Shown here: piece after piece, positions 3,689 to 59,777 of the stretch
Layout: each line of letters opens with the position of its first letter
Position numbering within the stretch: position 1 is the stretch's first letter
Source of the DNA: Haliotis rufescens
Lineage: Eukaryota
Direction: 5' to 3'
DNA length: 64,000 nt
Assembly: GCF_023055435.1 (NCBI RefSeq)
Contig: NW_025963890.1
Coordinates: forward strand, 62,496,001-62,560,000
Position numbers and translations under genes: made by a program
The notes under the pieces: generated by a model
The model's database searches: none
Seen by the model: only the letters and a program-made list of their open reading frames with translations
Told to the model about the DNA's origin: nothing

Positions 3689-5131
3689 TCAACACCACCC
3701 AGGACTCCATACACCGCCATAGTATTTTGGGTTCGCCCTTGGAACATGAGAATGGTCCTGGGCCGGGACACGGGTTTTCTTCCAGTTCTCCAGCCTCTTC
3801 TTCATCATGTCCACTAGCTCAGGGTACTTGCCTGAGAGGTCGAAATGTTCAGTTGGATCTGCAGTAATGTTGTACAGCATGAAGGGAGGGAAGGTTTGGT
3901 TATCAGCTTGAAAAACACGTTCATCAATTCCAAGATGTGGCAATGGAGCCCAACCGTTATGATGTCCCGGACTTCCTTGCATAAGTTTGAGATCTCCGTA
4001 CCTTATGGCAGCCGCTTCTTGACTGTCATAGATGTTGTAGACGAACTCATTCCGTTTGGAATGTCCACCATTGATGAGCATGTCGTACTGACTGACTCCG
4101 TCCATGTTTGGGTCTGTGTTCTCTCCACCAGCCAGCTCCAACAATGTCGGGTACCAGTCCACAGCATGCATCATTCCAGTGTTGAGGTAGCCCGTCTTTT
4201 TCAAAAGTGTTTTACTGTAGATGAATCCTGTACCTTTCGTTCCCCCTTCCCAGAGAGTAGTCTTGGCCCCTCTTAAAGGCAAGTTATTAGCAGCAACATA
4301 TGTGGGACCACCATTATCGGTTGTAAAGACTAACAATAAATTGTCCATGAGACCTTTGTCTTCTAATGCCTTAGTGATATTCCCAACAGCTTCATCCAAA
4401 GCACTCACCATTCCACAATAGACCCTTCTTTTTATGGTTTCTATATTTTTGTACATGTTTTCATATTTAGGTGGAACTTCAAGAGGTACATGTACAGACT
4501 GGAATGGAAGGTACAGATAAAGTGGCTTACTGTTGTCGTGGTTCTCAATTATTTCAACAGCCCTGTCCGCAAACACATTTGCAGAATAGGTTCCATTGGC
4601 GTCTCTTTTGACAGTCTTGTTGACGCGAAAATCCAGCCCCACTTCTTCGCTACTTAGCTGTCTCACGTGAGTAAAGTAGTCCTCATCACCATTGTAATAT
4701 CCAAGATAGGAATCAAAGCCTCTCTCCGTGGGTGTATATTTCCAGTTACAGAATCCAAGATGCCACTTTCCAACCATGTGAGTATCATAGCCAAGTTGTT
4801 TCAGTTTTTGTGGTATTGTTGTTAGATTGGCCGGCAGGTGTTTTGCTTGATCTATCCCAATAACGCTGTCCTGTAGTCCAGTGTGATAGGGGAAATATCC
4901 CGACATGAAGCAGTTTCTGGAGGGTGAACACAAAGGCTGGACGTAAGAAGAGTTGAGGATGACTCCAGCCTTGGCCAGTCTGTCCAGGTTAGGAGTGATC
5001 ATTTGAGGGTTCCGAAATCCAACATCGTTCCATCCGAGGTCATCAGCGACTATAAATACAATGTGAGGTTTCTCTGCACATTCGCAGATAACAAAAGTCA
5101 GAAGAATAAAGACAGCTCTTTGGAGATTCAT
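3689..5131 (-). CDS. Arylsulfatase B-like secreted sulfatase (S1 family), copy g1, single coding exon
   Basis: Intact ORF with signal peptide MNLQRAVFILLTFVICECA, ADDLGW, FGly motif CSPSR, GKWHLG, SVH, TDNGG, RGAK and the C-terminal GVWSPGWC. ATG 5131 is the start shared with the paralogs; an in-frame upstream ATG at 5167 is private to this copy. Confidence 0.93.
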   Translation of the reverse strand: MNLQRAVFILLTFVICECAEKPHIVFIVADDLGWNDVGFRNPQMITPNLDRLAKAGVILNSSYVQPLCSPSRNCFMSGYFPYHTGLQDSVIGIDQAKHLPANLTTIPQKLKQLGYDTHMVGKWHLGFCNWKYTPTERGFDSYLGYYNGDEDYFTHVRQLSSEEVGLDFRVNKTVKRDANGTYSANVFADRAVEIIENHDNSKPLYLYLPFQSVHVPLEVPPKYENMYKNIETIKRRVYCGMVSALDEAVGNITKALEDKGLMDNLLLVFTTDNGGPTYVAANNLPLRGAKTTLWEGGTKGTGFIYSKTLLKKTGYLNTGMMHAVDWYPTLLELAGGENTDPNMDGVSQYDMLINGGHSKRNEFVYNIYDSQEAAAIRYGDLKLMQGSPGHHNGWAPLPHLGIDERVFQADNQTFPPFMLYNITADPTEHFDLSGKYPELVDMMKKRLENWKKTRVPAQDHSHVPRANPKYYGGVWSPGWC

Positions 5132-5545
5132 TTTGCTTCTGCTTAATGTGATACATTGTGCTTCCATTTAAAGGTTTCCAATAGATAACGTGATTTTCGT
5201 GACTTGCCTAGAGCATGAATTCTTTCTGTGTGATTACCAGCTGGATAGTTCCCTTGTCAAGATATATACAACAGAATTTATGCAGATGTTGCATGACCTT
5301 TTTCACGAAGCCTGCATGTAAAACGATAACCCATATAATATATGAAATTCTTCAGTCTGAGATGTTTTGAGAAAATCGGAAGAACTGGACGACTGCTGAG
5401 CATCATTGTTGTTAATATTTTAGTTCAGTGCTCGTATGTGTAATTGTGCTATGCGTTCATTGAACTCAAATAACAATACATTTACACTTCTTCTTTAAAA
5501 TCTTATCACAGTGTTAATTGTTCATATGAACGGGGCATACAGAAT

Positions 5546-5930
5546 AACATCAGCAGACACCAGCCAGCCATGAACCGTGACCTATCTGCCTTGTGCTTGG
5601 GACACATTGCTTTGGCTTCCATTTGCCCATTGCTATGTCCATTCTTTCAGCTATCAGTGCTAATTACCCACGGCCTCCTGTTTGCCCATTGTCCATTGCC
5701 TATTACTTATCTATGATAACTTAGGTACTGTCTTTCTTTCTAGTTGCTAGTTTCTACCCGTTGTTCTTTTCCACCTTTTGTTATCTTATTAATTTTGTTG
5801 TCCTTACATGTACATATATTAGCTCTCTGCCTCATGGCATTTATTCGCCTGATGAAGGAGTAAGCATATACTCCGAAACGTTGTGTTCCTCATAATAAAG
5901 AAGTTGACATCCATATATTCTCTTCCTTAC
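5546..5930 (+). mobile_element. Penelope-like element 3' fragment with minimal hammerhead motif (5846-5885)
   Basis: GIY-YIG C-terminal remnant (PAMNRD..LPCAW), then CTGATGA-AGGAG-loop-CTCC-GAAACGTT, then AATAAA. Confidence 0.7.
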
Positions 5931-6374
5931 ACAATAACACAAAGAAATATATGTTCAAGAATCAATGAACACTTTCTCTTGAAATTTTTTACCCTCTTAA
6001 CATAGTATTAATTGTGCATATGAACGGGGCCTACCGAATAGCTCTATAGCTGGTAATTGTTTATGTCATGGTTTATGTAGTGGACATGTGGGGGACGTGT
6101 TGGGCAGGATACGCTCAGATGTTCCTGCTATCAGTACTATTTGATAATGAATCATGAATACATGCTCATGATATAGTCGGAATCGTATAATAGAGCGGGT
6201 TTTGTCGCTTTTATTTACACTCTTACAGCTGCACATCTTTTTCTTGAGCGTCATTGTATTCTATTACAAGTTATTGATTTTTTGTGAAGCTTTGACATGT
6301 ATTAGTTTGGAAGAACAAATGCATTGGGTTAGTTGTCCTGTGTTGTGCACGTGGTATGTATCTAAGACATGACT

Positions 6375-15105: not shown

Positions 15106-16548
15106 TCAACACCACCCAGGACTCCATACACCGCCATAGTATTTTGGGTTCGCCCTTGGAACATGAGAAGGGTCCTGGGCCGGGACACGGGACTTCTTCC
15201 AGTTCTCCAGCCTCTTCTTCATCATGTCCACTAGCTCAGGGTACTTGCCTGAGAGGTCGAAATGTTCAGTTGGATCTGCAGTAATGTTGTACAGCATGAA
15301 GGGAGGGAAGGTTTGGTTATCAGCTTGAAAAATACGTTCATCAATTCCAAGATGTGGCAATGGAGCCCAACCATTGTGAATTCCTGGACTTCCTTGCATG
15401 AGTTTGAGATCTCCGTACCTTATGGCAGCTGCTTCTTGGCTGTCATAGATATTGTAGACGAACTCATTCCGTTTGGAGGGTCCACCATTGATGAGCATGT
15501 CGTACTGACTGGTTCCGTCCATGTTTGGGTCTGTGTTCTCTCCACCAGCCAGCTCCAACAATGTCGGGTACCAGTCCACAGCATGCATCATTCCAGTGTT
15601 GAGGTAGCCCGTCTTCTTCAAAAGTGTTTTACTGTAGATGAATCCTGTACCTTTCGTTCCCCCTTCCCACAGAGTAGTCTTGGCCCCTCTTAAAGGCAAG
15701 TTATTAGCAGCTCTATACGTAGGACCACCATTGTCGGTTGTAAAGACTATCAATAAATTGTCCATGAGACCTTTTTCTTCTAATGCCTTAGTGATATTCC
15801 CAACAGCTTCATCCAAAGCACTCACCATTCCACAATAGACCCTTCTGTTTATGGTTTCTATATTTTTGTACATGTTTTCATATTTAGGTGGAACTTCAAG
15901 AGGTACATGTACAGACTGAAATGGAAGGTACAGATAAAGTGGCTTACTGTTGTCATGGTTTTCAATTATTTCAACAGCCCTGTCTGCAAACACATTAGCA
16001 GAATAGGTTCCATTGGCGTCTCTTTTGACAGTCTTGTTGACGTGAAAATCCAGCCCCACTTCATCGCTACTTAACTGTCTCGTGTGAGTATAGTAGTCCT
16101 CATCACCAGAGTAATATCCAAGATAGGAATCAAAGCCTCTCTCTGTGGGTGTATATTTCCAGTTACAGAATCCAAGATGCCACTTTCCAACCATGTGAGT
16201 ATCATAGCCAAGTTGTTTCAGTTTTTGTGGTATTGTTGTTAGATTGGCCGGCAGGTGTTTTGCTTCATCTATCCCAATACAGCCGTCCTGTAGTCCAGTG
16301 TGATAGGGGAAATATCCTGACATGAAGCAGTTTCTGGAGGGCGTGCATAAAGGCTGGACGTAAGAAGAGTTGAGGATGACTCCAGCTTTTGCCAGTCTGT
16401 CCAGGTTAGGAGTGATCATTTGAGGGTTCCGAAATCCAACATCATTCCAGCCGAGGTCATCAGCGACTATAAATATAATGTGAGGTTTCTCTGCACACTC
16501 ACAGACAACTAGAGTTGCAATGAAGCATAAAGCTGATATGAAATTCAT
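15106..16548 (-). CDS. Arylsulfatase B-like sulfatase, copy g2 (480 aa)
   Basis: Intact ORF with signal peptide MNFISALCFIATLVVCECA and CTPSR. All S1 catalytic residues are present (D30, D31, C68, R72, K122, H124, H214, D272, N273, K290). Confidence 0.95.
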   Translation of the reverse strand: MNFISALCFIATLVVCECAEKPHIIFIVADDLGWNDVGFRNPQMITPNLDRLAKAGVILNSSYVQPLCTPSRNCFMSGYFPYHTGLQDGCIGIDEAKHLPANLTTIPQKLKQLGYDTHMVGKWHLGFCNWKYTPTERGFDSYLGYYSGDEDYYTHTRQLSSDEVGLDFHVNKTVKRDANGTYSANVFADRAVEIIENHDNSKPLYLYLPFQSVHVPLEVPPKYENMYKNIETINRRVYCGMVSALDEAVGNITKALEEKGLMDNLLIVFTTDNGGPTYRAANNLPLRGAKTTLWEGGTKGTGFIYSKTLLKKTGYLNTGMMHAVDWYPTLLELAGGENTDPNMDGTSQYDMLINGGPSKRNEFVYNIYDSQEAAAIRYGDLKLMQGSPGIHNGWAPLPHLGIDERIFQADNQTFPPFMLYNITADPTEHFDLSGKYPELVDMMKKRLENWKKSRVPAQDPSHVPRANPKYYGGVWSPGWC

Positions 16549-18459: not shown

Positions 18460-19839
18460 GGAACGGGACACGGGTTTTCTTCCAGTTCTCCAACCTCTTC
18501 TTCATCATGTCCACTAGCTCAGGACGTTTGGCTGAGAGGTCGAAGTGTTCCGTTGGATCTGCAGTAATATTGTATAGCATGAAGGGAGGGAACTGTTGGT
18601 TATCAGCTTGATAAACACGTTCATCAATTCCCAGATGTGGTGGAGGAGCCAAACCATTGTGATCTCCCGGACTTCCTTGCATGAGTTAGAGATCTCCATA
18701 CCGTATTGCAGCTGCTTCCTGCTCATCGTAGATGTTGTAGACGAACTCATTCCGCTTGGTGGGTCCGCCATTGATGAGCATGTCGTACTGACTGACTCCG
18801 TCCATGTTGGGGTCTGTGTTCTCTCCACCACCCAACTCCACCAAAGTCGGGTACCAGTCTACAGCATGCATCATTCCAGTGTTGAGATAGCCTTTCTTTT
18901 TCAGAAGGGTTTTACTGTAGATAAATCCGGTGCCTTTCGTACCCCCTTCCCATAGAGTATTTTTGGCTCCTCGTAAAGGCACGTTATTTGATGCTGTATA
19001 TGTGGGACCACCATTATCGGTTGTAAAGACTAACAAAAGATTGTCCACGAGACCTTTGTCTTCTAATGCCTTAGTGATATTCCCAACAGCTTCATCCAAT
19101 GCACTCACCATTCCACAATAGACCCTTCTGCTTTTAGTTTCTATGTTCTTGTACATGTTTTCATATTTAGCTGGAACTTCAAGAGGTGCATGTACAGACT
19201 GGAATGGAAGGTATAGATAAAGTGGCTTACTGTTGTCGTGGTTCTCAATGATTTCAACAGCCCGGTCCGCAAACGCATTAGCAGAATAGCAGAATAGGTC
19301 TCATTGGCGCTTCTGTTGATGGTCAAGTTGAAGCGAAAATCCAGCCCCACTTCATCCCTACTTTCCTGTCTCATGTGAGTAAAGTAGTCCTCCATTCCAG
19401 AGTAATATCCAAGATAGGAGTCAAAGCCTCTCTCTGTGGGTGTATACTTCTTGTTACAGAATCCAAGATGCCACTTTCCAACCATGTGAGCATCATAGCC
19501 AAGTTGTTTAAGTTTTTGTGGTATTGTTGTTAGATTGGCCGGCAGGTGTTTTGCTTCGTTGACCAATATAACGCCATCTTGTAGTCCGGTGTGATAAGGG
19601 AAATATCCTGACATGAAGCAGTTTCTTGAGGGCGAACACAAAGGCTGGACGTAAGAAGAGTTGAGGTTGACTCCAGCTTTGGCCAGTCTGTCCAGGATAG
19701 GTGTGATCATTTGAGGGTTCCTAAATCCAACATCGTTCCAGCCGAGGTCATCAGCGACTATAAATACAATGTGAGGTTTCTTTGCACATTCACAGATAAC
19801 AAAAGTCAGAAGAATAAAGACAGCTCTTTGGAGATTCAT
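18460..19839 (-). pseudogene. Arylsulfatase B-like pseudogene, copy g3
   Basis: Close paralog of g5 with three lesions: an 8-nt tandem duplication (gcagaata x2, 19281-19296) causing a frameshift, an AAA>TAA nonsense codon at 18686-18688, and deletion of the last ~24 codons at ~18460. Confidence 0.92.
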
Positions 19840-23807: not shown

Positions 23808-26800
23808 GAGTGAGTGAGGGAGTGAGTTAAGCTTTAAGTCACATCGGCAATATTTCAGCCACATCGTGACTATCAATGGTTAAATATAATACATATATTG
23901 AAGCTTATGTACAAACCTGCCAACGAGGGACAGTAAAATAACTAGACTTATCACAGAAATAAATGTAAAACTAGTATTTAATCATAAAATCAATAGCACT
24001 ATACATAACGGTACAATATAAAAAAGGGCTATAGATCGCCAGCAACTGAAGGTAGACCACCATGCTAGGGTCCATGGGGACTTACAGTACTTTTGCTACC
24101 TGCATGGACCCCAGCCGGATTTACATCATCCCTTCAGCTGTTGGCGATTATGACAAATTTAGCCAAAGGAAAACGAACATATATACTACTATTAAAAATG
24201 TGGCCAAAATAAATATACCTTGAAAGATGTGGTCTTACATACCCTCTCAGGGGGACAATAATTTTACATTACTTCAACCCCCTTCGAGGATACACCCACT
24301 AACAATCTCAGTTATCAAATTTATTTTACCAATTATAAAAACTATACTATATACAAAACATATCAATCAAAATTTATGCAACAATTCAATTTCTTTTAAA
24401 AAGTCAATAATTAAATGAACACTGATATTGAAAAGATCCTTTAAGGATGAAACTTTGAAATATTTATCCCTTGTGATGGAAAAATCAACAAAATCAAGCA
24501 GGACATGCTTGACGGTGATTTTTTCATCACAAGGGATACAAAATGGAGGATCCTCACCTTTTAAAAGATATTTGTGGGTATACCTGCTATGGCCAATACG
24601 ACATCGCATAATGACCTCTTCAAATCTGGACTGACAGCCCAAGTAGGTGTAACCAATATTTGGTTTAATTTCATGTAATTTATTGATACCTACTTGGGAG
24701 TCCCACTTCTTTTGCATCAGATCACAAATATAAGATCTGATTACAGGTTTAAAATCAGTGTATGGGATAAGAAGTGGTGTCACAGATTTGTTGAGTGCTG
24801 CTTTTGCAGCAGCATCAGCCATTGAGTTGCCTTTGATGCCCACATGACTGGGCAACCAACAAAAGACGATGTCGTATTGGCCAGTAGCAAGTTCATTAAA
24901 TAGTTCAATAATTTTGATTAAAAGTGGATTTTGACATGATATGTTATGGATAGCCTGCAGGCAAGAAAGAGAATCGGAAAATAGGATAAACTTCTGATAT
25001 TTTGACTGTTTACTGATATATTGTAAAGCTGTTAAAATGGTATTGGCCTCTGCTGTGAAAATAGAACTATTATCGGGTAATCTGGAGGAGATAGTCCTGG
25101 ATCCAATGACAGTGGCGCTGGCAACAGCGCCACTATCCTTGGATCCATCTGTAAAGAAAGATTTGTAAGTATTATATGTGTTTCTTAATTCATTTTCTTA
25201 ATTCATGTATTTTTGTTGATAAATAAGTTGATTTGTTTCCGATTTCTTTAATTTAGTGAATGTCAGATCCACCTCGGGCTTTACCAACTGCCAAGGTGGA
25301 GAAGACAAAAGCTGTGTGGGGGCTATAGCTTCAAGATTAATTTTAGCTGCAGAAATATCAGATTGAACTCTTATTCCAAGTGGGGGGAGAACCGATGATT
25401 TTTTATTATAGAGATTTTCATAAAGGGGGTGAAAAACACAGTCATATGCTGGATTCGAGTTATTAGAGCGTAATTTAGTGACATATTGTAAGGATAATTT
25501 AATTCGGCGTTGTTTGAGGGATGGTTCATCAGCCTCAACGTACAGACTGTCGATAGGAGAAGTTCGGAAAGATCCAATACAGAGTCTCAGACCTTGATGG
25601 TGGATAGAGTCCAAAAGTTTAAGATTACTTTTGCAGGCTCCACCATAGATGATGGAGCCATAATCAAGTTTAGAGCGAATAAGTGCTCTGTACAGTTGAA
25701 GGAGGGTTTTCTGATCCCCTCCCCACTTGGAATTTGAAACAACTTTTAGGAGATCAAGGGCCTTCAGGCATTTATTTTTCAAATATTTTATGTGAGGTAA
25801 AAACGTTAAATGGTGGTAAAAAATAAGACCCAAGAACTTAGCCTCTTTTACAACTTTAATCGGAGTGCTATCTAAAATTAAAACAGGGTCTTTATGGGGT
25901 TTGTATTTCCTACAAAAGTGGAAACAATTTGTTTTGTTTTTTGAAAATTTAAAACCATTTTCTAAACACCATTTATTTATCTTATTTAGACATAATTGTA
26001 ATTGTCTTTCGATAGTATGCATGTTTTTACCACGACATGATATGTTAAAATCATCCACGAATAAAGATCCATCAATGGAGTCATTTAAAACCTTAGAGAG
26101 GCTATTTATTTTAATACTGAAGAAGGTGACAGACAAAATACTGCCTTGTGGGACACCCTGATCCTGATTATAATGATCAGACAGGGTAGTACCCACGCGG
26201 ACTTGAAATTGTCTGTCAGATAAAAACTTGGATATGAATTGAGGCAAACGGCCTCGCAATCCAAAGTCATGTAAGTCTTTTAAAATACCGTGCTTCCATG
26301 TAGTGTTGTATGCTTTTTCTAGATCAAAAAAGATAGACACTGCATGTTGCTTATTTACAATGGCATTTTTAACGAATGACTCCATTCGAACTAAGTGGTC
26401 AATGGTACTGCGATTTTTACGGAATCCACATTGGATATTTGTGATTAAGTTATGGGATTCTAAGTACCAGGTTAATCTGTTATTGACCATGCGTTCCATG
26501 GTTTTGCAAACGCAACTAGTCAATGAAATTGGTCGATAATTGGAAGGATCAGTATGATCACGAGCAGGTTTAGGTATGGGAATTACTATAGCATCACGCC
26601 ATGAAGAAGGAAATTCTCCTGACGTCCAGATTTTATCAAAGATCATCAAGAGGGTTTCTTAACAGGATTGCGGTAAATGTTTTAAGAGTTGATAATGTAT
26701 ATTATCAGACCCTGAAGCAGTGTCATGAGCTTGCCAAAGGGCAGTATTGAGTTCATGAATGGAAAAGATTTCATTGTAATCCTCCCCATTATCTGAATTA

Positions 26801-29800
26801 AAATTAATAGGTTTCTTTTCTTGTTGCTTTTGATATTTTTGGAATTGAGGGGCATAGTTCGAGGAGGAAGAATGTTGAGCCAGAGTTTCACCAAGTTTGT
26901 TAGCAATATCAGAAGTATTGGTTAATAATTCATTCCCATTTTTAAGGTGGTGGACACTAGATTTAGAACCCTTACCTTTTATTTTCTTAATCATGTTCCA
27001 TACCTTCGATATCGGCGTACGTGAATTTATCTTCGAGACATAATTTTGCCAAGTCTGACGCTTGTTTTGTTGAAATGTACGCCGTGCTTTAGCGTTTAAT
27101 ATTTTGAATTTATTTAAATTGTGGACCATAGGATGGCAACGGAAATATTGTTCAGCTTTTTTCCTCGCCTTCCTAGCTAGTTTGCAATCATTGCTGAACC
27201 ATGGTTTACGAAAGTGAGGATTTGAAGAGGACTTCGGAATACATTCATCAGCTATTTTCTTAAGATTATCAGAGAAAAGCTTTATAGGATCAGTGGCATC
27301 AATAAAAACATCAGGATTTAGTTGGTTTGTGCAAAGGACTTCATATAAAGCCCAGTTTGCCTTAGGAAAATTCCATCTTGATGATGGAGGAATATCAGAT
27401 GGTGTCACAGATTTTAAAATGGTAGGAAAATGGTCACTTCCACAGAGGTCATCGTGGACTGACCATTCAAATTCATCAAGTAAATTAGAGTCTACAACGG
27501 ACAAGTCAAGACAAGAGTAAGTTCCAGTTACCGGATGTAGATACGTATGAGAACCATCATTAAAAATGCATAAATCGTTAGTTAAGAAAAAATCCTCTAG
27601 TAATTTTCCTTTGTTATTGATATCATTACTACCCCAAAGTGGGTTATGATCATTCAAATCTCCCATGATGACACATGGCTTAGGGAGCTGGTCATACAGT
27701 GCCTGAAGATCAGACTGTCGGAGAAAGTACGATGGTGGGACATACAAAGAACATAAAGTAAAGACAATATTTAATGTCACACGTACTGCAACAGCCTGAA
27801 GCGGGGTACTGAGGGGAACAGGACTGTGAATGATGCCCTGCCTCACCATAACAGAAGATCCTCCAGTTGCTTTATCACCCGGAGGTGAAAAGCAATGGTA
27901 AGAATCATACTGTCTTAAATCAAAGTGATCAATATTTTTTAGGAAGGTTTCTTGTAAACAAAATGCAGATGGTTTGAAGTCTTGAATTAAGAGCTGAAGA
28001 TCATTAAAAGTGGTCCGAAGTCCTCTACAGTTCCACTGTATCAAAGTGGGAGAACAACTCATGGGGGTTCAACTGGAGATCGCGAGCGTGGGGAAGGTCC
28101 TCTCTGCTGTAACGGCAGCGGTGGAGGGACCTCCATAGCTAGAGGTTCAAAAGGGTTTTGAACCTCTAGTGGGACAGTTAAAGGTGAAGGCACCTCAATG
28201 TGTTTGAGGGCCTTGGATTCTTTTTTCTTTTGTTGTTTTTTTTCTTTTCTTGTCGAAGATACATTTGGTTTCATATAAGGAACAGATTTACGAGTTTCGT
28301 GTTTAGGAATAGAGTCTGGAAGAGAGTCGTTTAACAGCTCAGTTTGTGAAGCTGCTGATGAAGTTGGGGATTTTTTGTCAGCATGAACTTCATACAAGAT
28401 GGTCTGTTCGTCAGAAATCAAGTTTATAGCCGTTTGGCATCCAGTATCCACTTTGAGTGGAGAAAAGGAGACTGCAGCAGAATAAGTCAGTGTAGAAGAG
28501 GAAGGATTAGATTCCTGATCAACCAATTTCTTGGCATCAGCAAAGATGTCATTTGTGTACTTTAGTTTTAGAACTTTTGTTTGTTTCATAAAAGCAGGAC
28601 ACGATTTGAAAGAGGACATGTGGTCGCCGCCGCAGTTGGCACACCTGATGTTATCAGTGCAATCAGTGCCATCATGATGTTTACTGCAGCGTGAACAAAT
28701 TTGGGTGGCATGACAGGATTTTGCACGATGTCCAAAATGTTGGCAGTGAAAACACCGGAGTGGGCTGGGAATGTAAACATCCACACCAATGTTAAAGTAC
28801 CCAGCTTTGACAGAGGAAGGGATCTTTGGAAGAGCAAACGTAAACAGATACGTGTTGGTCTTGATGATGGTATCGCCTTCTTTCCTGGTAAATCGTTTAA
28901 CAGACGACACACCTTGTTGCTGTATTTCTGTTGCAATCTCCTCTTCAGACATATCTGAGAGGCACTTTGCACGATCTCGTACAATGCCTCTACACGAATT
29001 TAATGTTTTGTGCACTGAGACAACAATCTCAGTATTTGCAAAATGATGTGCATTGAGGAGATTTTGAGATTGTTGTCTCCTGGCACACTCCACAAGCAGT
29101 GATCCGGACCGGAGACGAGTAACATTTTTAACTGTTCCACATATACCTTCAATTGACTTTGAAACAACGAAGGGGTTGATCTCGAGGGACTCTCCATCAA
29201 CTCCTCCAACAACCAGAAATCATGGCCACGAATCAATATTGTGTACAGACTCCTCATCCGAAGATGTGGCTGTATCTGTATCAACATGCCTACGTTTAGT
29301 TTTTTATCTAGAACCAGTGAATTGTTGGGTAGCCATAATGAAACAAATGAAATTCAACACCCCTGCTCCCCACCCACCATGGAGTGTCAACAGAAACGAT
29401 GTTGAAGTTGAAACCAACTGCAAACACCAGGGTTACAGGGGTGCTATACTCCAGCAAAAAGGACACAGGTAGCTAAAATTGTCAAACAGGGTTAAAAGTC
29501 AGGCTGGTTCCGCCCTAGACAGTTACCTGATAACAAATAGAACCCGGAGGTCATTGATGCCAGATTGGCCCATGAGCCACCGCCTTCTGGCGTAAGACTC
29601 TAGGCAATTTATTCAATCCAAAATTGAGTATTCACACAAATTATGAACCGCCAAGACCAAAATATACAGTAAAATATAACACAGGTGTGCATATACAATA
29701 TTACGCACAGGGCCTGGCATGACCAGTCGATTGATAAGACCGGGCCCATCTTACCACCCGTCTAGGCGAAGTAAGGGTCGAAGTAGTGTGTTGGGCAAAG

Positions 29801-35731: not shown

Positions 35732-35901
35732 GTGAGTGAGTTAGTGAGTATGGTTTTACGCCGCTTTTAGCAATATTCCAGCAATATCACGGCGGGGGAA
35801 ACCAGAAATGGGCTTCACACATTGTGCCCATGTCGGGAATCGAACCCGGGTCTTCGGCGTGACGAGCGAACGCTTTAACCACTAGGCTACCCGACCGCCC
35901 C
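35732..35901 (-). mobile_element. tRNA-derived SINE (Asp-like head) inserted in LINE3 ORF1
   Basis: A box TAGCCTAGTGG, B box GGTTCGATTCC and LINE-like tail with (CTCA)n. TSD gactgtcacatga at 35719-35731 and 35902-35914. Confidence 0.92.
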
Positions 35902-37480
35902 GACTGTCACATGATGTAGTCAGAGGCAGCGGGTGTTCAGAATGTGTCCACGTCAAGTCCGTCTGACATTCTATAGATCTACTGGTTGAAGGGCGAGAGA
36001 CAGCAGCAGCAGCAGCAGCATAAGATTGTTTGGATGAAGGTGTCCGGCTATCATAGAGTTTTTTCGCATCCAAGTAACTGACGTTGTTTTGACATTTGAT
36101 TGTCAAAATGTCTTTTTCACGTGTCCAAAAAGGACAGGATTTTGATGACGCTACATGTTGACCCTTACAATTTGTACATTTCAGGTCTGCTGTACAGCCT
36201 GAACCATCATGATTTCCACCACCATGGAGGGCAAACAGTCGGACGATCACATGATTTGGAGCCGTGGCCAAACTTCTGACATTTGTAACATCGGAGCGGA
36301 TTGGGGACATACACCTCCACTCCGATGTTAAAATAGCCTGCCTTAATAGATTGTGGAATTGTTGGAAGAGAAAAGAACAAATAGGTATTTGTTGGAACGA
36401 TATTTTCACCATCTTTTCTATTGAAACGTTTCACTGATGTGACACTTTGTCCTTTGAGTTCTTCCAAAATGTCTTCTTCTGACATTTCTGCCAGGCAACG
36501 AGCTCTGTCGCGGATGATCCCCCGACTCGAATTCAACGTTCTGTGTTCGGAAACAACAACTTCTGTGTTAGCAAAGCTAGTACATTTTAAAAGATTAATA
36601 GCCTGCTGTCTCCGTGCACACTCCACCAAAAGAGAGCCGCTCCGGAGCCGTGAAACATTCTTCACCTCACCACAGATGCCGTCAATGGCTTTAGAAATGG
36701 CGAAGGGATTGATTTTCAAAGGTAGTTGATTACGTGATTCCACTACGATAAACCGAGCCCAAGAATTTGAAGTTTGTGAAATAGAAGCATCGTCGTCAGA
36801 TGAGAAAATCTCAGCTTCCAGACGTCTCTTCTTGTCATTGCGGTTTGAACCAGATATATAGTGAGCCATGATGAAATTAATGTATTCAGCACCCCTGCTC
36901 ACCCACCAAAGAGCGATGTTGTCCTGCACCGGATCTCCAACATGCAAACATCAGGGATACAGAGGTGTTATACTCAAGTAAGAACAACATGAATAGCTGT
37001 ATTTGTCTATCAAATAAAATGTCAGGCTGGTTCGGCCCATGGCAAGAAATTGAAGACATACAGAACTCAGAGGTCGAAAGTACCAGATTGGCCCATGAGC
37101 CACCGCCTTCTGGCGTAAGACTCTAGGCAATTTATTCAATCCAAAATTTAGAATTCACACAAGTTATGGATGGCCAAGACCGAAATATACATTAAAATAC
37201 AACACATGTGTGTATATACAATATTACACACAGGGCCTGGCATGACCAGCCGATTGATAAGACCGGGCCCATCTTACCACCCGTCTAGGCGAAGTAAGGG
37301 TCGAAGTAGTGTGTTGGGCAAAGGAACACTGTTCCTGGAACCAGTGCCCTCAACTACCAGACTCCCGTCCTCCGCCGACACAGGGACGCAACCCACGGCA
37401 AACAGGTTGCCCATTTTAGTCGCCTCATACGACCAGCAATGGGAGGCTGTGGAAATATTCTGCCCCGGTTCCACACAGGG

Positions 37481-40898: not shown

Positions 40899-42338
40899 TC
40901 AACACCACCCAGGACTCCATACACCGCCGTAGTATTTCGGGTCCGCCCTTGGAACAGGAGAAGGGTCCTGAGCCGGGACGCGGGACTTCTTCCAGTTCTC
41001 CAACCTCTTCTTCATCATGTCCACTAGCTCAGGGTACTTGGCTGAGAGGTCGAAGTGTTCAGTTGGATCTGCAGTAATGTTGTACAGCATGAAGGGAGGG
41101 AACTTCTGGTTATCAGCTTGATAAACACGTTCGTCAATTCCCAGATGTGGTAAAGGAGCCCAACCATTGTGATCTCCCGGACTTCCTTGCATGAGTTTGA
41201 GATCTCCGTACCTTATGGCAGCTGCTTCCCGCTCGTCATAGATATTGTAGACGAACTCATTCCGTTTGGAGGGTCCACCATTGATGAGCATGTCGTACTG
41301 ACTGATCCCGTCCATGTTGGGGTCTGCGTTCTCTCCACCAGCCAGCTCCAACAATGTCGGGTACCAGTCTACAGCATGCATCATTCCAGTGTTGAGGTAG
41401 CCCGTCTTCTTCAGAAGTGTTTTACTGTAGATGAATCCTGTACCTTTCGTCCCCCCTTCCCACAGAGTATCTTTGGCCCCTCGTAAAGGCAAGTTATTAG
41501 CAGCATCATATGTGGGACCACCATTATCGGTTGTAAAGACTAACAACAGATTGTCCATGAGACCTTTGTCTTCTAATGCCTTAGTGATATTCCCAACAGC
41601 TTCGTCCAAAGCACTCACCATTCCACAATAGACCCTTCTGCTTATGGTTTCTATATTTTTGTACATGTTTTCATATTTAGGTGGAACTTCAAGAGGTTCA
41701 TGTACAGACTGGAATGGAAGGTATAGATAAAGTGGCTTACTATTGTCGTGGTTCTCAATGATTTCAACAGCTCTGTCCGCAAACACATTTGCAGAATAGG
41801 TTCCATTGGCGTCTCTTTTGACAGTCTTGTTGACGCGAAAATCCAGCCCCACTTCTTTGAGTTTCTGGTGCACGTGAGTAAAATACTCCTCTGCACCAGA
41901 GTAATATCCAAGATAGGAATCAAAGCCTCTCTCTGTGGGTGTATATTTCCAGTTACAGAATCCAAGATGCCACTTTCCAACCATGTGAGCATCATAGCCA
42001 AGTTGTTTCAGTTTATGTGGTATTGTTGTTAGATTGGCCGGCAGGTGTTTTGCTGCGTTTATCTCAATAACTCCGTCCTGTAGTCCAGTGTGATAGGGGA
42101 AATATCCCGACATGAAGCAGTTTCTGGAGGGCGAACACAAAGGCTGAACGTATGAAGAGTTGAGGATGACTCCAGCTTTGGCCAGTCTGTCCAGGTTAGG
42201 GGTGATCATTTGAGGGTTCCGAAATCCGACATCATTCCAGCCGAGGTCATCAGCGACTATAAATATTATGTGAGGTTTCTCTGCACACTCACAGATAAAT
42301 AGAGTCACAATAAAGCATAAAGCCGATATGAAATTCAT
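40899..42338 (-). CDS. Arylsulfatase B-like sulfatase, copy g4 (479 aa)
   Basis: Intact ORF with MNFISALCF signal peptide, CSPSR and all catalytic motifs. It has a one-codon deletion in the variable loop (HQKLKEVG). Confidence 0.95.
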   Translation of the reverse strand: MNFISALCFIVTLFICECAEKPHIIFIVADDLGWNDVGFRNPQMITPNLDRLAKAGVILNSSYVQPLCSPSRNCFMSGYFPYHTGLQDGVIEINAAKHLPANLTTIPHKLKQLGYDAHMVGKWHLGFCNWKYTPTERGFDSYLGYYSGAEEYFTHVHQKLKEVGLDFRVNKTVKRDANGTYSANVFADRAVEIIENHDNSKPLYLYLPFQSVHEPLEVPPKYENMYKNIETISRRVYCGMVSALDEAVGNITKALEDKGLMDNLLLVFTTDNGGPTYDAANNLPLRGAKDTLWEGGTKGTGFIYSKTLLKKTGYLNTGMMHAVDWYPTLLELAGGENADPNMDGISQYDMLINGGPSKRNEFVYNIYDEREAAAIRYGDLKLMQGSPGDHNGWAPLPHLGIDERVYQADNQKFPPFMLYNITADPTEHFDLSAKYPELVDMMKKRLENWKKSRVPAQDPSPVPRADPKYYGGVWSPGWC

Positions 42339-44290: not shown

Positions 44291-45733
44291 TCAACACCAC
44301 CCCGGACTCCATACACCGCCATAGTATTTCGGGTTCGCCCTTTGAACAGGAGAAGGGTCCTGAGCCGGGACACGGGTTTTCTTCCAGTTTTCCAGCCTCT
44401 TCTTCATCATGTCGACTAGCTCAGGATATTTGGCTGAGAGGTCGAAGTGTTCAGTTGGATCTGCAGTAATATTGTACAGCATGAAGGGAGGAAACTTCTG
44501 GTTATCAGCTTGATAAACACGTTCATCAATTCCCAGATGTGGTAAAGGAGCCCAACCATTGTGAGATCCCGGACTTCCTTGCATGAGTTTGAGATCTCCA
44601 TACCGTATTGCAGCTGCTTCCCGCTCGTCATAGATGTTGTAGACGAACTCATTCCGTTTGGTGGGTCCACCATTGATCAGCATGTCGTACTGACTGACTC
44701 CGTCCATGTTAGGGTCTGTGTTCTCTCCACCAGCCAGCTCCACCAATGTCGGGTACCAGTCTACAGCATGCATCATTCCAGTGTTGAGGTAGCCTGTCTT
44801 CTTCAGAAGGTTTCTACTGAAGATGAAACCAGTGCCTTTCGTTCCCCCTTCCCACAGAGTATTTTTGGCTCCTCGTAAAGGCAAGTTATTTGATGCTGTA
44901 TATGTGGGACCACCATTATCGGTTGTAAAGACTAACAAAAGATTGTCCATGAGACCTTTGTCTTCTAATGCTTTAGTGATATTCCCAACAGCTTCGTCCA
45001 ATGCACTCACCATTCCACAATAGACCCTTCTGCTTTTAGTTTCTATGTTCTTGTACATGTTTTCATATTTAGGTGGAACTTCAAGAGGTGCATGTACAGA
45101 CTGGAATGGAAGGTATAGATAAAGTGGCTTACTGTTGTCGTGGTTCTCAATTATTTCAACAGCCCTGTCCGCAAACACATATGCAGAGTAGGTCTCATTT
45201 GCGCTTCTGTTGATGGTCAAGTTGAAGCGGAAATCCAGCCCCACTTCATCGCGACTTTTCTGTCTTATGTGAGTATAGTAGTCCTCTTCACCATTGTAAT
45301 ATCCAAGATAGGAGTCAAAGCCTCTCTCTGTGGGTGTATACTTCTTGTTACAGAATCCAAGATGCCATTTTCCAACCATGTGAGCATCATAACCAAGTTG
45401 TTTCAGTTTTTGTGGTATTGTTGTTAGATTGGCCGGCAGGTGTTTTGCTTCGTTGGCCAATATAACGCCATCTTGTAGTCCGGTGTGATAGGGGAAATAT
45501 CCCGACATGAAGCAGTTTCTGGAGGGCGAACACAAAGGCTGGACGTAAGAAGAGTTGAGAATGACTCCCGCTTTGGCCAGTCTGTCCAGGTTAGGGGTGA
45601 TCATTTGAGGGTTCCTAAATCCAACATCGTTCCAGCCGAGGTCATCAGCGACTATAAATACAATGTGAGGTTTCTCTGCACATTCACAGATAACAAAAGT
45701 CAGAAGAATAAAGACATGTCTTTGGAGATTCAT
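44291..45733 (-). CDS. Arylsulfatase B-like sulfatase, copy g5 (480 aa)
   Basis: Intact ORF with MNLQRHVF signal peptide, CSPSR and all catalytic motifs. Confidence 0.95.
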   Translation of the reverse strand: MNLQRHVFILLTFVICECAEKPHIVFIVADDLGWNDVGFRNPQMITPNLDRLAKAGVILNSSYVQPLCSPSRNCFMSGYFPYHTGLQDGVILANEAKHLPANLTTIPQKLKQLGYDAHMVGKWHLGFCNKKYTPTERGFDSYLGYYNGEEDYYTHIRQKSRDEVGLDFRFNLTINRSANETYSAYVFADRAVEIIENHDNSKPLYLYLPFQSVHAPLEVPPKYENMYKNIETKSRRVYCGMVSALDEAVGNITKALEDKGLMDNLLLVFTTDNGGPTYTASNNLPLRGAKNTLWEGGTKGTGFIFSRNLLKKTGYLNTGMMHAVDWYPTLVELAGGENTDPNMDGVSQYDMLINGGPTKRNEFVYNIYDEREAAAIRYGDLKLMQGSPGSHNGWAPLPHLGIDERVYQADNQKFPPFMLYNITADPTEHFDLSAKYPELVDMMKKRLENWKKTRVPAQDPSPVQRANPKYYGGVWSPGWC

Positions 45734-50219: not shown

Positions 50220-51662
50220 TTAACACCAACCAGGGCTCCATACACCGCCGTAGAATGAGGGGTTTGCCCCAGGAACAGGAGTATTACTCTGTGCCGGAAC
50301 ACGGGACTTCTTCCAGTTCTCCAGCCTCTTCTTCATCATGTCCACTAGCTCAGGGTACTTGGCTGAGAGGTCGAAGTGTTCAGTTGGATCTGCAGTAATG
50401 TTATACAGCATGAAGGGAGGGAAGGTTTGGTTATCAGCTTGAAAAACACGTTTATCAATTCCAAGATGTGGCAATGGAGCCCAACCGTTGTGATCTCCCG
50501 GACTCCCTTGCATGAGTTTGAGATCTCCGTACCTTATGGCAGCTGCTTCTTGCCTGTCATAGATATTGTAGACGAACTCATTCCGTTTGGAGGGTTTACC
50601 ATTGATGAGCATGTCGTACTGACTGATCCCGTCCATGTTGGGATCTGTGTTCTCTCCACCAGCCAGCTCCACCAAAGTCGGGTACCAGTCTACAGCATGC
50701 ATCATTCCAGTGTTGAGGTAGCCCGTCTTCTTCAGAAGTGTTTTACTGTAGATGAACCCAGTTCCCTTCGTTCCCCCTTCCCATAGAGTTTTTTTGGCTC
50801 CTCGTAAAGGCAAGTTATTAGCAGCATCAAATGTAGGACCACCATTGTCGGTTGTAAAGACTAACAACAGATTGTCCATGAGACCTTTGTCTTCTAAAGC
50901 CGTCGTAATATTTCCCACAGCTTCATCCAATGCACTCACCATTCCACAATATACCCTTCTGTTTTCGGTTTCTATGTTCTTGTACATGTTTTCATATTTA
51001 GGTGGAACTTCAAATGGTACATGAACAGATTGAAATGGAAGATACAGATAGAGTGGTTTATTATTGTCGTGGTTTTCAATGATTTCAACAGCCCTGTTAG
51101 CATACACATACGCAGAGTAGGTCCCACTGGCGTCTCTATATGCAGTCTTGTTGAAGCGAAAATCCAGCCCCACGTCACCTTGGCGATCCTCTGACATGTG
51201 AGTAAAATACTCTTCCATTCCAGAGTAATATCCAAGATAGGTGTCAAAGCCTCTCTCTGTGGGTGTATATTTCCAGTCACAGAAGCCAAGATGCCACTTC
51301 CCAACCATGTGAGCATCATAGCCAAGTTGTTTCAGTTTCTGTGGTATTGTTGTTAGATTGGCCGGCAGGAATTGCGCTGCGTTTACAGCAATAGTGCCAT
51401 CTTGTAGTCCAGTGTGATAGGGGAAATATCCCGACATGAAGCAGTTTCTTGAGGGCGTGCATAAAGGCTGAACGTAAGAAGAGTTGAGGATGACTCCAGC
51501 TTTTGCCAGTCTGTCCAGGTTAGGGGTGATCATTTGAGGGTTCCGAAATCAAACATCGTTCCAGCCGAGGTCATCAGCGACAATAAATACAATGTGAGGC
51601 TTCTCTGCACACTCACAGAGAACTATAGTCAAAATAAGATATAAAGCCGATATGAAATTCAT
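50220..51662 (-). pseudogene. Arylsulfatase B-like copy g6 with a single nonsense codon (G38*)
   Basis: ATG at 51662 reads MNFISALYLILTIVLCECAEKPHIVFIVADDLGWNDV*FRNPQM. TGA at 51549-51551 replaces the GGA found in the paralogs. The rest (437-aa ORF 50220-51533) is intact but lacks the signal peptide and the metal-binding DD. Confidence 0.8.
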
Positions 51663-55756: not shown

Positions 55757-55757
55757 C

Positions 55758-58155: not shown

Positions 58156-58334
58156 CGAAACTCGGTTGTGTTTACATTGTCAGTCACTGTTCGAAACTGA
58201 AACTTTAATTGAAAACAAACGAAGTTGATGCAGTTAAGATTCGATTTTACATGTTCGTATGACTGTTGGTACTTTGAACATTAATATACTATAAACGTAT
58301 CTTTGTAAGATAATGTGTCTGTTTGTAAGAGACA

Positions 58335-59777
58335 TCAACACCAGCCTGGACTCCAAACACCGCCAAAATATTTGGGGTTTGCTGCAGGAACAGCTGAATT
58401 GTCTTGTGCCGGGACACGGGACTTCTTCCAGTTCTCCAGCCTCTTCTTCATCATGTCCACTAACTCAGGATATTTGGCTGAGAGGTCGAAGTGTTCAGTT
58501 GGATCTGCAGTAATGTTGTATAGCATGAAGGGAGGGAAGGTTTGGTTATCAGATTGAAAGACACCTCCATCAATTCCAAGATGTGGTAAAGGAGCCCAAC
58601 CATTGTGAGATCCCGGACTTCCTTGCATGAGTTTGAGATCTCCATACCTTATTGCAGCTGCTTCCCGCTCGTCATATATGTTGTAGACGAACTCATTCCG
58701 TTTGGTGGGTCCACCATTGATGAGCATGTCGTACTGACTGACTCCGTCCATGTTGGGGTCTGTGTTCTCTCCACCAGCTAACTCCACCAAAGTCGGGTAC
58801 CAGTCCACAGCATGCATCATTCCAGTGTTGAGGTAGCCCGTCTTCTTCAGAAGAGTTTTACTGTAGATGAACCCAGTTCCCTTCGTTCCCCCTTCCCACA
58901 GAGTATTTTTGGCTCCTCGTAAAGGCAAGTTATTAGCAGCAACAAATGTGGGACCACCATTATCGGTTGTAAAGACTAACAAAAGATTGTCCATGAAACC
59001 TTTGTCTTCTAAAGCTTTAGTGATATTCCCAACAGCTTCGTCTAACGCACTCACCATTCCACAATAAATTCTTCTGCTTTTGTTTGCGATGTTCTTGTAC
59101 ATGTTTTCATATACAGGTGGAACTTCTAAAGGTTCATGAACAGACTGGAATGGAAGGTATAGATAAAGTGGCTTACTGTTGTCATGGTTCTCAATGATTT
59201 CAACAGCTCTGTCCGCAAACACATTTGCAGAATAGGTTCCATTTGCGTTTCCATAGACCGTCTTGTTGAAGTGAAAATCCAGGCCCACGTCACCTTGGCG
59301 ATCCTGTGACGTGTGAGTAAAATACTCTTCATCACCGGAGTAATAGCCAAGATAGGAATCAAAGCCTCTCTCTGTGGGTGTATATTTCCAGTTACAGAAG
59401 CCAAGATGCCACTTCCCAACCATGTGAGCATCATAGCCAAGTTGTTTCAGTCTTTGTGGTATAGTTGTTAGGTTGGCTTGGAGGAATTTTGCTGCGTTTA
59501 TGGCAATAACGCCATCTTGTAGTCCAGTGTGATAGGGGAAATATCCCGACATGAAGCAGTTTCTGGAGGGCGAGCACAGAGGCTGAACGTAAGAAGAGTT
59601 GAGGATGACTCCAGCTTTGGCCAGTCTGTCCAGGTTAGGGGTGATCATTTGAGGGTTCCGAAATCCGACATCGTTCCAGCCGAGGTCATCAGCGACTATA
59701 AATATAATGTGAGGTTTCTCTGCACACTCACAGATAACAAAAGTCAGAACAATAAAGAGAGCTCCTCCGAGACTCAT
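58335..59777 (-). CDS. Arylsulfatase B-like sulfatase, copy g7 (480 aa)
   Basis: Intact ORF. ATG 59777 (MSLGGALFIVLTFVICECA) aligns with the paralog starts; the frame stays open upstream to 59996. Confidence 0.92.
   Translation of the reverse strand: MSLGGALFIVLTFVICECAEKPHIIFIVADDLGWNDVGFRNPQMITPNLDRLAKAGVILNSSYVQPLCSPSRNCFMSGYFPYHTGLQDGVIAINAAKFLQANLTTIPQRLKQLGYDAHMVGKWHLGFCNWKYTPTERGFDSYLGYYSGDEEYFTHTSQDRQGDVGLDFHFNKTVYGNANGTYSANVFADRAVEIIENHDNSKPLYLYLPFQSVHEPLEVPPVYENMYKNIANKSRRIYCGMVSALDEAVGNITKALEDKGFMDNLLLVFTTDNGGPTFVAANNLPLRGAKNTLWEGGTKGTGFIYSKTLLKKTGYLNTGMMHAVDWYPTLVELAGGENTDPNMDGVSQYDMLINGGPTKRNEFVYNIYDEREAAAIRYGDLKLMQGSPGSHNGWAPLPHLGIDGGVFQSDNQTFPPFMLYNITADPTEHFDLSAKYPELVDMMKKRLENWKKSRVPAQDNSAVPAANPKYFGGVWSPGWC

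What the first reader, a model, noticed from the sequence alone, without database searches (positions are those of the whole stretch)
3689..59777. Tandem sulfatase repertoire with hypervariable residues next to the catalytic site
Seen: seven ~480-codon paralogs are nearly invariant over long stretches and keep every catalytic residue, yet they vary repeatedly at a few sites (g2 numbering, order g1-g7). These are 89-95 after the FGly helix, 149 (D/D/M/A/E/M/D), loop 156-164, 215 right after H214 (V/V/A/E/A/V/E), 279 after DNGG (V/R/T/D/T/D/V), 291 right after K290 (T/T/N/D/N/K/N), 370-371 and 390 (H/I/D/D/S/D/S). Several of these are charge reversals. Established: H214, D272/N273 and K290 correspond to human ARSB H242, D300/N301 and K318. 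Inference: their neighbours line the sugar pocket, and the array is a diversifying toolkit for differently sulfated substrates such as dietary algal polysaccharides.
Basis: partly seen in the sequence, partly recalled or inferred. Interest (0 to 1): 0.78.

Follow-up and report, generated by a model that had tools for sequence, protein, structure and literature searches.

The report
Abalone sulfatase gene array, diversifying sites
This stretch of red abalone DNA is part of a large cluster of duplicated sulfate-removing enzyme genes that stay strictly conserved except at a few positions that keep changing, which fits enzymes being retuned for different sulfated substrates.

Summary
The window holds seven tandem, single-exon, signal-peptide-bearing ARSB-like S1 sulfatase genes on the minus strand. 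Only five are intact. g3 has an 8-bp duplication, a TAA stop and a lost 3' end; g6 has a TGA at codon 38.

The window is a slice of a ~268-kb array in Haliotis rufescens. 22 near-full-length copies without stops lie on this contig, and 37 of 70 matches genome-wide are of that kind.

The genes are old (mean dS 0.32) and under strong purifying selection (omega ~0.2). My own codon models still put ~2.5-3% of codons at omega ~4. M2a vs M1a gives 2dlnL 73.7, and 46-57 with 3-8 segment-specific trees.

Recombination is present. It inflates the test in null simulations (9 of 24 above 5.99, maximum 27.1), but the real value is 74.1.

The best-supported sites are 215, 279, 390 and 92. Sites 93, 149 and 156-161 are fast but ambiguous. 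Sites 291 and 370-371 are not supported.

The same sites are the most variable in H. rubra paralogs, and 279 recurs in two other sub-arrays.

Pocket location was not tested in 3D, and substrates are untested. Neighbouring windows of this scan flagged the same array.

The parts
3689..5131 (-). g1, intact ARSB-like sulfatase gene (480 codons from MNLQR; the ORF extends upstream to 5167)
   Evidence: (PF00884 E 4e-57); identical to P0001
15106..16548 (-). g2, intact sulfatase gene, 480 codons; reference for the numbering
   Evidence: AF2 model pLDDT 94.8; 1FSU TM 0.91
18464..19839 (-). g3, pseudogene: 8-bp duplication (~19280-19295) shifts the frame, TAA at 18686-18688, 3' end replaced after ~18464
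40899..42338 (-). g4, intact, 479 codons (one-codon deletion in the 159-160 hairpin)
   Evidence: covered by RNA-like contigs of X1 and X4
44291..45733 (-). g5, intact, 480 codons
   Evidence: covered by RNA-like contigs of X1, X2 and X4
50220..51662 (-). g6, probable pseudogene: TGA at codon 38 (51549-51551); the remaining ORF from Met44 lacks the signal peptide and D30/D31
   Evidence: 1 TGA
58335..59777 (-). g7, intact, 480 codons from MSLGG (the ORF runs upstream to 59996)
15904..15906 (-). codon 215 of g2, directly after catalytic His214. It reads NNA in all 17 close copies, encodes 7 amino acids and shows no synonymous change
   Evidence: NEB 0.95-0.99; FEL p=0.003
15712..15714 (-). codon 279 of g2, six residues after Asn273; 7 states; also the top site in clade B and in C+D
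   Evidence: (p=0.023)
15379..15381 (-). codon 390 of g2, loop of the C-terminal subdomain; 6 states
   Evidence: p=0.022
16270..16275 (-). codons 92-93 of g2, in the loop after the formylglycine helix; 8 and 6 states
   Evidence: site 92 p=0.055; site 92 ranks 1 of 460 in H. rubra
16066..16104 (-). codons 149 and 156-161 of g2 (loop and beta-hairpin 156-166): fast-evolving, indel-bearing, synonymous rate also high
24367..29093 (-). LINE-type retrotransposon between copies (gag-like, APE, RT, RNase H region)
31813..36947 (-). second, degraded LINE-type element

Best explanation
The window is a 56-kb slice of a ~268-kb tandem array of single-exon genes in the red abalone, Haliotis rufescens. 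The genes encode secreted or lysosomal formylglycine-dependent S1 sulfatases of the ARSB type.

The array evolves by birth and death. There are recent lineage-specific duplications, LINE insertions, two dead copies in this window, and gene conversion or recombination between copies.

Nearly the whole protein, including the invariant sulfate-binding machinery, is under strong purifying selection. A handful of loop codons have been replaced repeatedly under positive selection, in independent sub-arrays and in a second abalone species. The firmest are 215, 279, 390 and 92; probable ones are 93, 149 and 156-161.

Inferred, not shown: these residues shape the leaving-group (0/+-1) subsites, so that paralogs accept differently sulfated substrates. 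Most plausibly these are dietary algal glycans or other sulfated algal compounds handled in the digestive gland.
For: Family: PF00884 E~1e-57 in 6 of 6 ORFs scanned. 1FSU matches at E 3.7e-117. AF2 model pLDDT 94.8; Foldseek 1FSU TM 0.91, 43% identity. All 39 extracted copies keep DDCPRKHHDNK. FGE genes are present in the genome.

Organism and extent: 4 proteins identical to my ORFs are named H. rufescens. 37 of 70 genome matches are near-full-length without stops, 22 of them in the C112 array.

Selection:
- Pairwise omega has median 0.18 and mean dS is 0.32.
- M1a -6320.24 vs M2a -6283.37; M8a -6319.46 vs M8 -6286.01.
- 2dlnL is 55.5, 56.7 and 46.0 with 3, 5 and 8 local trees.
- The real 74.1 compares with a maximum of 27.1 in 24 null simulations.
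- FEL gives 215 p=0.003, 279 p=0.023, 390 p=0.022.
- Codon 215 is NNA in 17 of 17 copies.

Replication: 279 is the top site in clade B and in C+D. 9 of the 10 hot sites rank within the top 12 of 460 in 13 H. rubra paralogs.

Expression: RNA-like contig sets cover the g4/g5 CDS but not the spacer.

Precedent: 4 of 7 scallop ARSB proteins were detected in the hepatopancreas, with the hypothesis of adaptation to algal diets (PMC5159873). Abalone entrails are a commercial sulfatase source (PMC2684592). S1 specificity lies in variable leaving-group subsites (PMC9096561; PMC10154612).
Against: - Recombination is real (PHI p<0.001). It inflates the LRT: 9 of 24 null simulations exceeded 5.99. The weaker replicate LRTs (17.2/8.9 and 9.0/3.2) therefore fall inside the inflated null range.
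- No FEL site survives Bonferroni correction over 312 sites. At 149, 156, 93 and 160 the synonymous rate is also high.
- The codon models are my own implementation, not PAML or HyPhy.
- No 3D distances were computed.
- The RNA status of runs X1, X2 and X4 is a guess and their tissue is unknown.
- No enzyme activity or substrate is known for any copy.
- The nearest solved relative acts on animal GalNAc-4-sulfate, not on algal glycans.
Confidence: 0.7

Rival explanations
1. The hypervariable sites are unconstrained surface-loop positions (omega about 1). Their apparent omega>1 is an artefact of gene conversion or recombination, of alignment uncertainty near the indel, or of local mutation hot spots.
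For: PHI test p<0.001. Null simulations with discordant trees give 2dlnL up to 27.1, with 9 of 24 above 5.99. FEL finds a high synonymous rate at 149 (alpha 4.0), 156 (2.2) and 160 (54), and no site passes multiple-test correction. Sites 159-160 adjoin a one-codon indel.
Against: The real statistic, 74.1, is 2.7 times the largest null value, and it stays at 46-57 with local trees. Sites 215, 279 and 390 lie in ungapped regions with alpha near 0 and beta of 4-6. Codon 215 keeps its third base in 17 of 17 copies while encoding 7 residues. The same sites recur in H. rubra and in other sub-arrays.
Confidence: 0.15
2. The diversification is real but serves a non-dietary role, for example turnover of the animal's own sulfated glycans or mucus, host-microbe interaction, or reproduction-related recognition.
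For: The closest solved enzyme, human ARSB, degrades animal glycosaminoglycans. The tissue of expression was not established. Positive selection is typical of conflict-driven systems (general knowledge).
Against: A housekeeping lysosomal role does not call for 37 or more copies. Molluscan ARSB paralogs were detected in scallop hepatopancreas extract (PMC5159873). Abalone entrails are rich in sulfatase activity (PMC2684592). The dominant abalone gut bacteria carry few sulfatases (PMC5870069 passages).
Confidence: 0.12
3. The copies are redundant dosage amplifications of one activity, and the variable sites are tolerated noise with no change in specificity.
For: Copies are 85-100% identical in protein sequence with identical catalytic residues. 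Two of the seven are already dead.
Against: An omega>1 class is favoured over omega=1. Synonymous divergence of 0.1-0.4 with omega 0.2 shows that each copy has long been maintained.
Confidence: 0.08

Closest known systems
Human arylsulfatase B (N-acetylgalactosamine-4-sulfatase, PDB 1FSU)
   Same: Best sequence and fold match: E 3.7e-117, 43% identity, TM 0.91. All ten listed active-site residues align. Both have an N-terminal signal peptide.
   Different: The abalone genes have a single-exon CDS and lie in arrays of dozens. g2 has Asp94 and His98 where ARSB has Cys117 and Cys121; that these form disulfides in ARSB is recalled. ARSB has a 5-residue insertion in the 157/158 hairpin. The abalone substrate is unknown.
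Molluscan ARSB gene duplications (scallop hepatopancreas study, PMC5159873)
   Same: Multiple ARSB-like paralogs in molluscs: 7 in scallop, with 4 in the hepatopancreas proteome, and 16 in Aplysia. The authors hypothesise adaptation to diverse algae (passages read).
   Different: Here there are at least 37 apparently intact copies in one genome, in tandem arrays, with a statistical test for positive selection and named sites. That paper reports no selection test in the passages I read.
Bacterial S1_19 carrageenan 4-O-sulfatases (6B0J, 6BIA, 6PSM, 9HH2-4)
   Same: Next-best structural matches: TM 0.76-0.80, 27-29% identity. They act on galacto-configured 4-sulfates of algal polysaccharides. The post-FGly-helix loop and the C-terminal tail build the -1 subsite in S1_19B through F103, Y455 and Y458 (PMC6923384).
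   Different: Low identity, and loop lengths differ: S1_19B has an 8-residue insertion where g2 has 88/89. No evidence that the abalone enzymes act on carrageenan.
Commercial 'abalone entrails' sulfatase
   Same: Shows that Haliotis digestive tissue is rich in sulfatase activity (PMC2684592).
   Different: The genes behind that preparation are not identified in anything I read. The link to this array is an inference.

Membership tests
S1 formylglycine-dependent sulfatases (Pfam PF00884) | Profile match over the whole N-terminal domain | tested here: met
   6 of 6 ORFs scanned, E 1e-48 to 5e-58, profile positions 1-300 of 301 in five of them
S1 formylglycine-dependent sulfatases (Pfam PF00884) | C-x-P-x-R formylglycine motif | tested here: met
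   C68-[TS]-P70-S-R72 in 39 of 39 extracted copies
S1 formylglycine-dependent sulfatases (Pfam PF00884) | Metal ligands and sulfate-binding Lys/His (ARSB D53 D54 K145 H147 H242 D300 N301 K318) | tested here: met
   D30 D31 K122 H124 H214 D272 N273 K290 in 39 of 39 copies. Alignment; residue list in PMC7404199
S1 formylglycine-dependent sulfatases (Pfam PF00884) | Alkaline-phosphatase-like fold with a C-terminal subdomain | tested here: met
   AF2 pLDDT 94.8; 1FSU TM 0.91; 483 PDB matches at E<=0.001, and the listed top ones are all sulfatases
S1 formylglycine-dependent sulfatases (Pfam PF00884) | A formylglycine-generating enzyme available in the organism | tested here: met
   PF03781 exon-wise matches over the cut-off at two loci, C35 and C390
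S1 formylglycine-dependent sulfatases (Pfam PF00884) | Sulfate-ester hydrolase activity | not testable with these tools
   Needs recombinant enzyme
ARSB-type (GalNAc-4-sulfatase-like) subgroup | Closest characterised relative is ARSB rather than another S1 subfamily | tested here: met
   1FSU scores 395 bits against 194 bits or less for every other PDB sequence. NCBI names are 'arylsulfatase B-like', 'J-like' or 'I-like'
ARSB-type (GalNAc-4-sulfatase-like) subgroup | Exo GalNAc-4-sulfate specificity | not testable with these tools
   No assay, and the ARSB sugar-contact residues are not described in any text I could read
Gene family under diversifying (site-specific positive) selection | A codon class with omega>1 fits better than the neutral class, robust to recombination | tested here: met
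   Caveats: own implementation, 15 sequences
Gene family under diversifying (site-specific positive) selection | Selected sites map to the substrate-binding surface | tested here: inconclusive
   Only loop location, adjacency of 215 to His214, and the loop homology to S1_19B F103. No coordinates were available

The most novel reading that the evidence does not exclude
The abalone itself, not its gut bacteria, carries the main machinery for desulfating seaweed polysaccharides. This would be a genome-encoded repertoire of dozens of secreted ARSB-like enzymes. Substrate preference would be repeatedly re-tuned by substitutions at about 4-10 pocket-wall residues (92, 149, 156-161, 215, 279, 390), independently in each abalone lineage, tracking the sulfation patterns of available algae.
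Probability: 0.35. Interest if true: 0.72.

Novelty: new member of a known kind. Interest (0 to 1): 0.55.

Why it matters
Desulfation of fucoidan, carrageenan, porphyran and ulvan is usually credited to marine bacteria. The dominant abalone gut bacteria were reported to carry few sulfatases (PMC5870069 passages). A host array of 37 or more ARSB-like genes with a few positively selected loop residues gives a concrete, testable candidate for animal-encoded processing of sulfated algal compounds.

It also offers a natural mutational map of which non-catalytic positions tune S1 sulfatase specificity. The sites 92, 215, 279 and 390 can be swapped between near-identical paralogs. The array may also identify the genes behind the long-used 'abalone entrails' sulfatase reagent.

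Tried and rejected
- 3D mapping. Structure prediction returns no coordinates and /data holds none, so distances from the hot sites to the active site could not be computed. I looked for published pocket residues of ARSB in papers: PMC7404199 lists only the ten catalytic residues, and a residue-name search found nothing useful. PMC3472114 (GALNS) is not held. The ZgCgsA structure paper was not found. Supplementary notes and figures of PMC6923384 probably list the S1_19B contacts, and Table S2 of PMC5159873 the accessions.
- Linear proximity. A claim that hot sites cluster next to catalytic residues in the linear sequence was rejected. Only 215 and 279 are within 6 residues, about the chance expectation by my own arithmetic.
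- Treating the chi-square p-values of the LRT at face value was rejected after the null simulation.
- Orthology. Long-retained orthologous paralog pairs between H. rufescens and H. rubra were not found. The tree shows mostly species-specific clusters and only two weakly supported cross-species pairs.
- Literature. Searches found no paper in the held library on an abalone sulfatase gene expansion or on positive selection in molluscan sulfatases. This covers only that library.
- Rows dropped. g3, g6 (L011) and L017 were left out of all selection models. L018, L025, L026, L039 and L040 were left out of the clade replicates.
Full report
WHAT IS IN THE WINDOW. Seven sulfatase-like reading frames lie on the minus strand, each as one uninterrupted ORF:
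- g1 3689-5131
- g2 15106-16548
- g3 about 18464-19839
- g4 40899-42338
- g5 44291-45733
- g6 50220-51662
- g7 58335-59777

Five are intact. g3 carries an 8-bp tandem duplication that shifts the frame, a TAA at 18686-18688, a W394L change at a position invariant in 41 homologues, and loses homology after about 18464. g6 has a TGA at codon 38, which one search also reports as '1 TGA'.

Between the genes lie LINE-type retrotransposon ORFs (endonuclease, reverse transcriptase, RNase H) and a Tc1-like transposase remnant. Flanks are homologous too. The g3-g2 pair resembles the g5-g4 pair, and g1 combines a g3/g5-type 5' end with a g2-type body and 3' flank. This agrees with the scan's earlier notes s1-805692 and s1-805693.

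FAMILY.
- All six ORFs scanned match Pfam Sulfatase PF00884 (E 1e-48 to 5e-58), with weaker Sulfatase_C matches around the cut-off.
- The best solved relative is human ARSB, 1FSU (E 3.7e-117). Bacterial S1_19 carrageenan sulfatases follow.
- An AlphaFold2 model of g2 has mean pLDDT 94.8. It superposes on 1FSU with TM 0.91 at 43% identity, and next on 6B0J, 6BIA and 6PSM.
- With the alignment, g2 D30, D31, C68, R72, K122, H124, H214, D272, N273 and K290 fall on ARSB D53, D54, FGly91, R95, K145, H147, H242, D300, N301 and K318. This is the list given in PMC7404199 (Table 3, passages read) and in PMC5159873.
- All 39 copies extracted from the genome keep these residues.
- Formylglycine-generating-enzyme exons are present at two loci.
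- Each intact copy starts with a hydrophobic leader ending in CECA before EKPH, modelled as a helix at residues 2-17. I read this as a signal peptide by inspection; no predictor was run.

ORGANISM AND EXTENT. Proteins identical to my ORFs L014, L015, L016 and L030 are named 'arylsulfatase B-like' or 'I-like' [Haliotis rufescens]. The genome is therefore red abalone.

A six-frame search of the genome gave 70 matches. 37 are near-full-length without stops. 22 of those lie on contig C112 between 62,472,912 and 62,734,117, and all but one are on the same strand. The rest form clusters on C24, C157, C615, C13 and C523. These are lower bounds, as that tool states.

The window copies belong to a close clade of 17: 15 intact, plus L011 (= g6) and L017, each with a TGA. 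They are 85-100% identical in protein sequence. Earlier notes of this scan flagged the adjoining arrays (s1-805581, s1-812789).

THE OBSERVATION. Among the 15 intact close copies, 146 of 466 alignment columns vary. The most variable are:
- 92 and 159: 8 states each
- 149, 215 and 279: 7 states each
- 93, 160, 161 and 390: 6 states each

Codon 215 reads GTA, GAA, GCA, GGA, CAA, ATA or ACA. The third base is constant in 17 of 17 copies, and the codon sits between an invariant CAT (His214) and CCT/CCA (Pro216).

SELECTION.
- Whole-gene Nei-Gojobori omega has a median of 0.18 and mean dS is 0.32. The copies are therefore not merely young; they are held by purifying selection.
- I wrote a codon-likelihood program (F3x4, pruning algorithm). 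M0 gives omega 0.216.
- M1a -6320.24 vs M2a -6283.37, with 3.1% of sites at omega 3.9. M7 -6336.86, M8 -6286.01, M8a -6319.46.
- A PHI test shows recombination: observed 0.480 against a permuted mean of 0.535, sd 0.007, with 0 of 1000 permutations as low.
- With separate ML trees for 3, 5 and 8 segments, the M2a-M1a statistic is 55.5, 56.7 and 46.0, with 2.4-2.6% of sites at omega 3.9-4.3.
- As a control I simulated 24 data sets under M1a on the eight discordant segment trees and analysed them on one tree. 9 of 24 exceeded 5.99 and the maximum was 27.1. Chi-square p-values are therefore not trustworthy here. The real data gave 74.1 in the same pipeline.
- NEB posteriors of 0.9 or more in all four partitionings: 92, 93, 149, 156, 159, 215, 279 and 390.
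- A per-site FEL-type test on local trees gave beta>alpha at p<0.05 for 25, 95, 161, 215 (0.003), 279 (0.023) and 390 (0.022), with 92 at 0.055.
- At 149, 156, 93 and 160 the synonymous rate is also high. Sites 291, 370 and 371 show nothing. No site would survive correction over 312 tests. 102 sites show beta<alpha at p<0.05.

REPLICATION.
- Clade B (6 copies, about 72% identical to g2): the M2a-M1a statistic is 17.2, or 8.9 with 4 local trees. Site 279 has posterior 0.98-1.0.
- C615/C13 clusters (12 copies): 9.0, or 3.2 with 4 local trees. Sites 89 and 279 reach 0.96 on the single tree only.
- These statistics lie within the inflated null range, so the weight is in the recurrence of site 279.
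- At protein level, 13 H. rubra paralogs of this clade have 92, 159, 160, 161, 279, 149, 156, 390 and 215 at ranks 1, 2, 5, 6, 7, 9, 10, 11 and 12 of 460 sites. Site 93 ranks 27. Site 92 shows 6 states in a 7-member clade made up only of H. rubra copies.
- The joint tree shows mostly species-specific clusters. This fits recent duplication and/or homogenisation, with the hot sites escaping it.
- Close pairs differ disproportionately at the ten hot sites, for example 5 of 15 differences between g1 and L003 and 9 of 30 between g4 and L004.

WHERE THE SITES LIE. In the model, all the hot sites fall in loops or in a hairpin:
- 92-93 lie in the long loop 78-105 after the formylglycine helix.
- 149 lies after strand 141-145.
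- 156-161 lie in the hairpin 156-166.
- 215 follows His214.
- 279 lies in the loop after DNGG.
- 390 lies in the loop after strand 381-385 of the C-terminal subdomain.

[quoted passage not shown] In the HMMER alignment, F103 sits in an insertion exactly at g2 88/89. By ungapped extrapolation, Y455/Y458 fall near g2 465-468, a stretch that also varies.

ARSB has Cys117 and Cys121 where g2 has Asp94 and His98. I recall, but did not verify, that ARSB Cys117 is disulfide-bonded to Cys521 of the C-terminal tail. That would put these two variable stretches side by side.

Reviews state that the sulfate site is invariant and that specificity comes from the variable leaving-group subsites, with a few critical C-terminal-domain residues (PMC9096561; PMC10154612).

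All of this is inference. No distance was computed, and in the linear sequence only 215 and 279 are close to catalytic residues.

EXPRESSION. Three small contig sets, whose RNA status is the tool's guess, cover g4 and/or g5 coding sequence at 97% or more. They have zero depth over the spacer bins 42346-43703. A DNA-like run covers all 30 bins. No well-supported intron joint lies inside a CDS: the few joints there rest on a single contig each, with only 21-30 letters on the shorter side. Tissue and organism labels are coded, so a digestive-gland origin is not shown.

LITERATURE. These are passages read through 'find', not whole papers.
- PMC5159873 reports 7 ARSB genes in scallop, 4 in the hepatopancreas proteome and 16 in Aplysia, and proposes adaptation to algal diversity.
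- PMC2684592 lists Haliotis entrails as a sulfatase source.
- PMC5870069 finds few sulfatases in the dominant abalone gut bacteria.
- Searches found nothing in the held library on an abalone sulfatase expansion or on selection in these genes.

VERDICT. This is a real and much larger than reported tandem family of ARSB-type sulfatases in birth-and-death evolution. A small set of loop codons is under recurrent diversifying selection. The substrate-pocket location and the dietary role are plausible but unproven. It is a new, well-marked member of a known kind: a molluscan ARSB expansion, with adaptive diversification of a duplicated enzyme family.

Noticed in passing
window 59778-59996 (upstream of g7); L015: The g7 ORF continues in frame 73 codons upstream of the MSLGG start and includes a hydrophobic stretch. 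The paralog L015 has a similar in-frame extension. This could be an alternative, membrane-anchored N-terminus or just a conserved leader.
   Followed up: no
window 3845-4276 (+) and 15262-15693 (+): 143-codon antisense ORFs inside g1 and g2, conserved between the two copies. Most likely a by-product of the conserved sense frame.
   Followed up: no
window 46226-46400: Very high contig depth in all four runs (3188 in the DNA-like run). A 'goes back 38' joint at 46396->46359 appears in the three RNA-like runs, suggesting a transcribed repeat or hairpin upstream of g5.
   Followed up: no
window 8131-9656, 24367-29093, 31813-36947: Three LINE-type retrotransposon copies or fragments (APE, RT, RNase H), all in the same orientation as the sulfatase genes. 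Earlier notes s1-805614 and s1-805624 concern the 5' end of one of them.
   Followed up: partly
window 56925-57419: ORF with Tc3/Tc1-type transposase HTH domains.
   Followed up: no
G000 C334:60930007-60977213; C523:1077930-1079324: More distant ARSB-like matches. The three C334 matches each cover only the same roughly 115-130-residue stretch (query 285-417), so they may be fragments or single exons of more distant sulfatase genes. The 49%-identical C523 copy is again one open frame. The expanded family may descend from an intronless founder, possibly a retrogene.
   Followed up: no
G000 other contigs (earlier notes s1-810310, s1-810336, s1-815239): The scan's first readers also noted arrays of intronless IDS-like sulfatases elsewhere in this genome. 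Sulfatase expansion may therefore involve more than one S1 subfamily.
   Followed up: no
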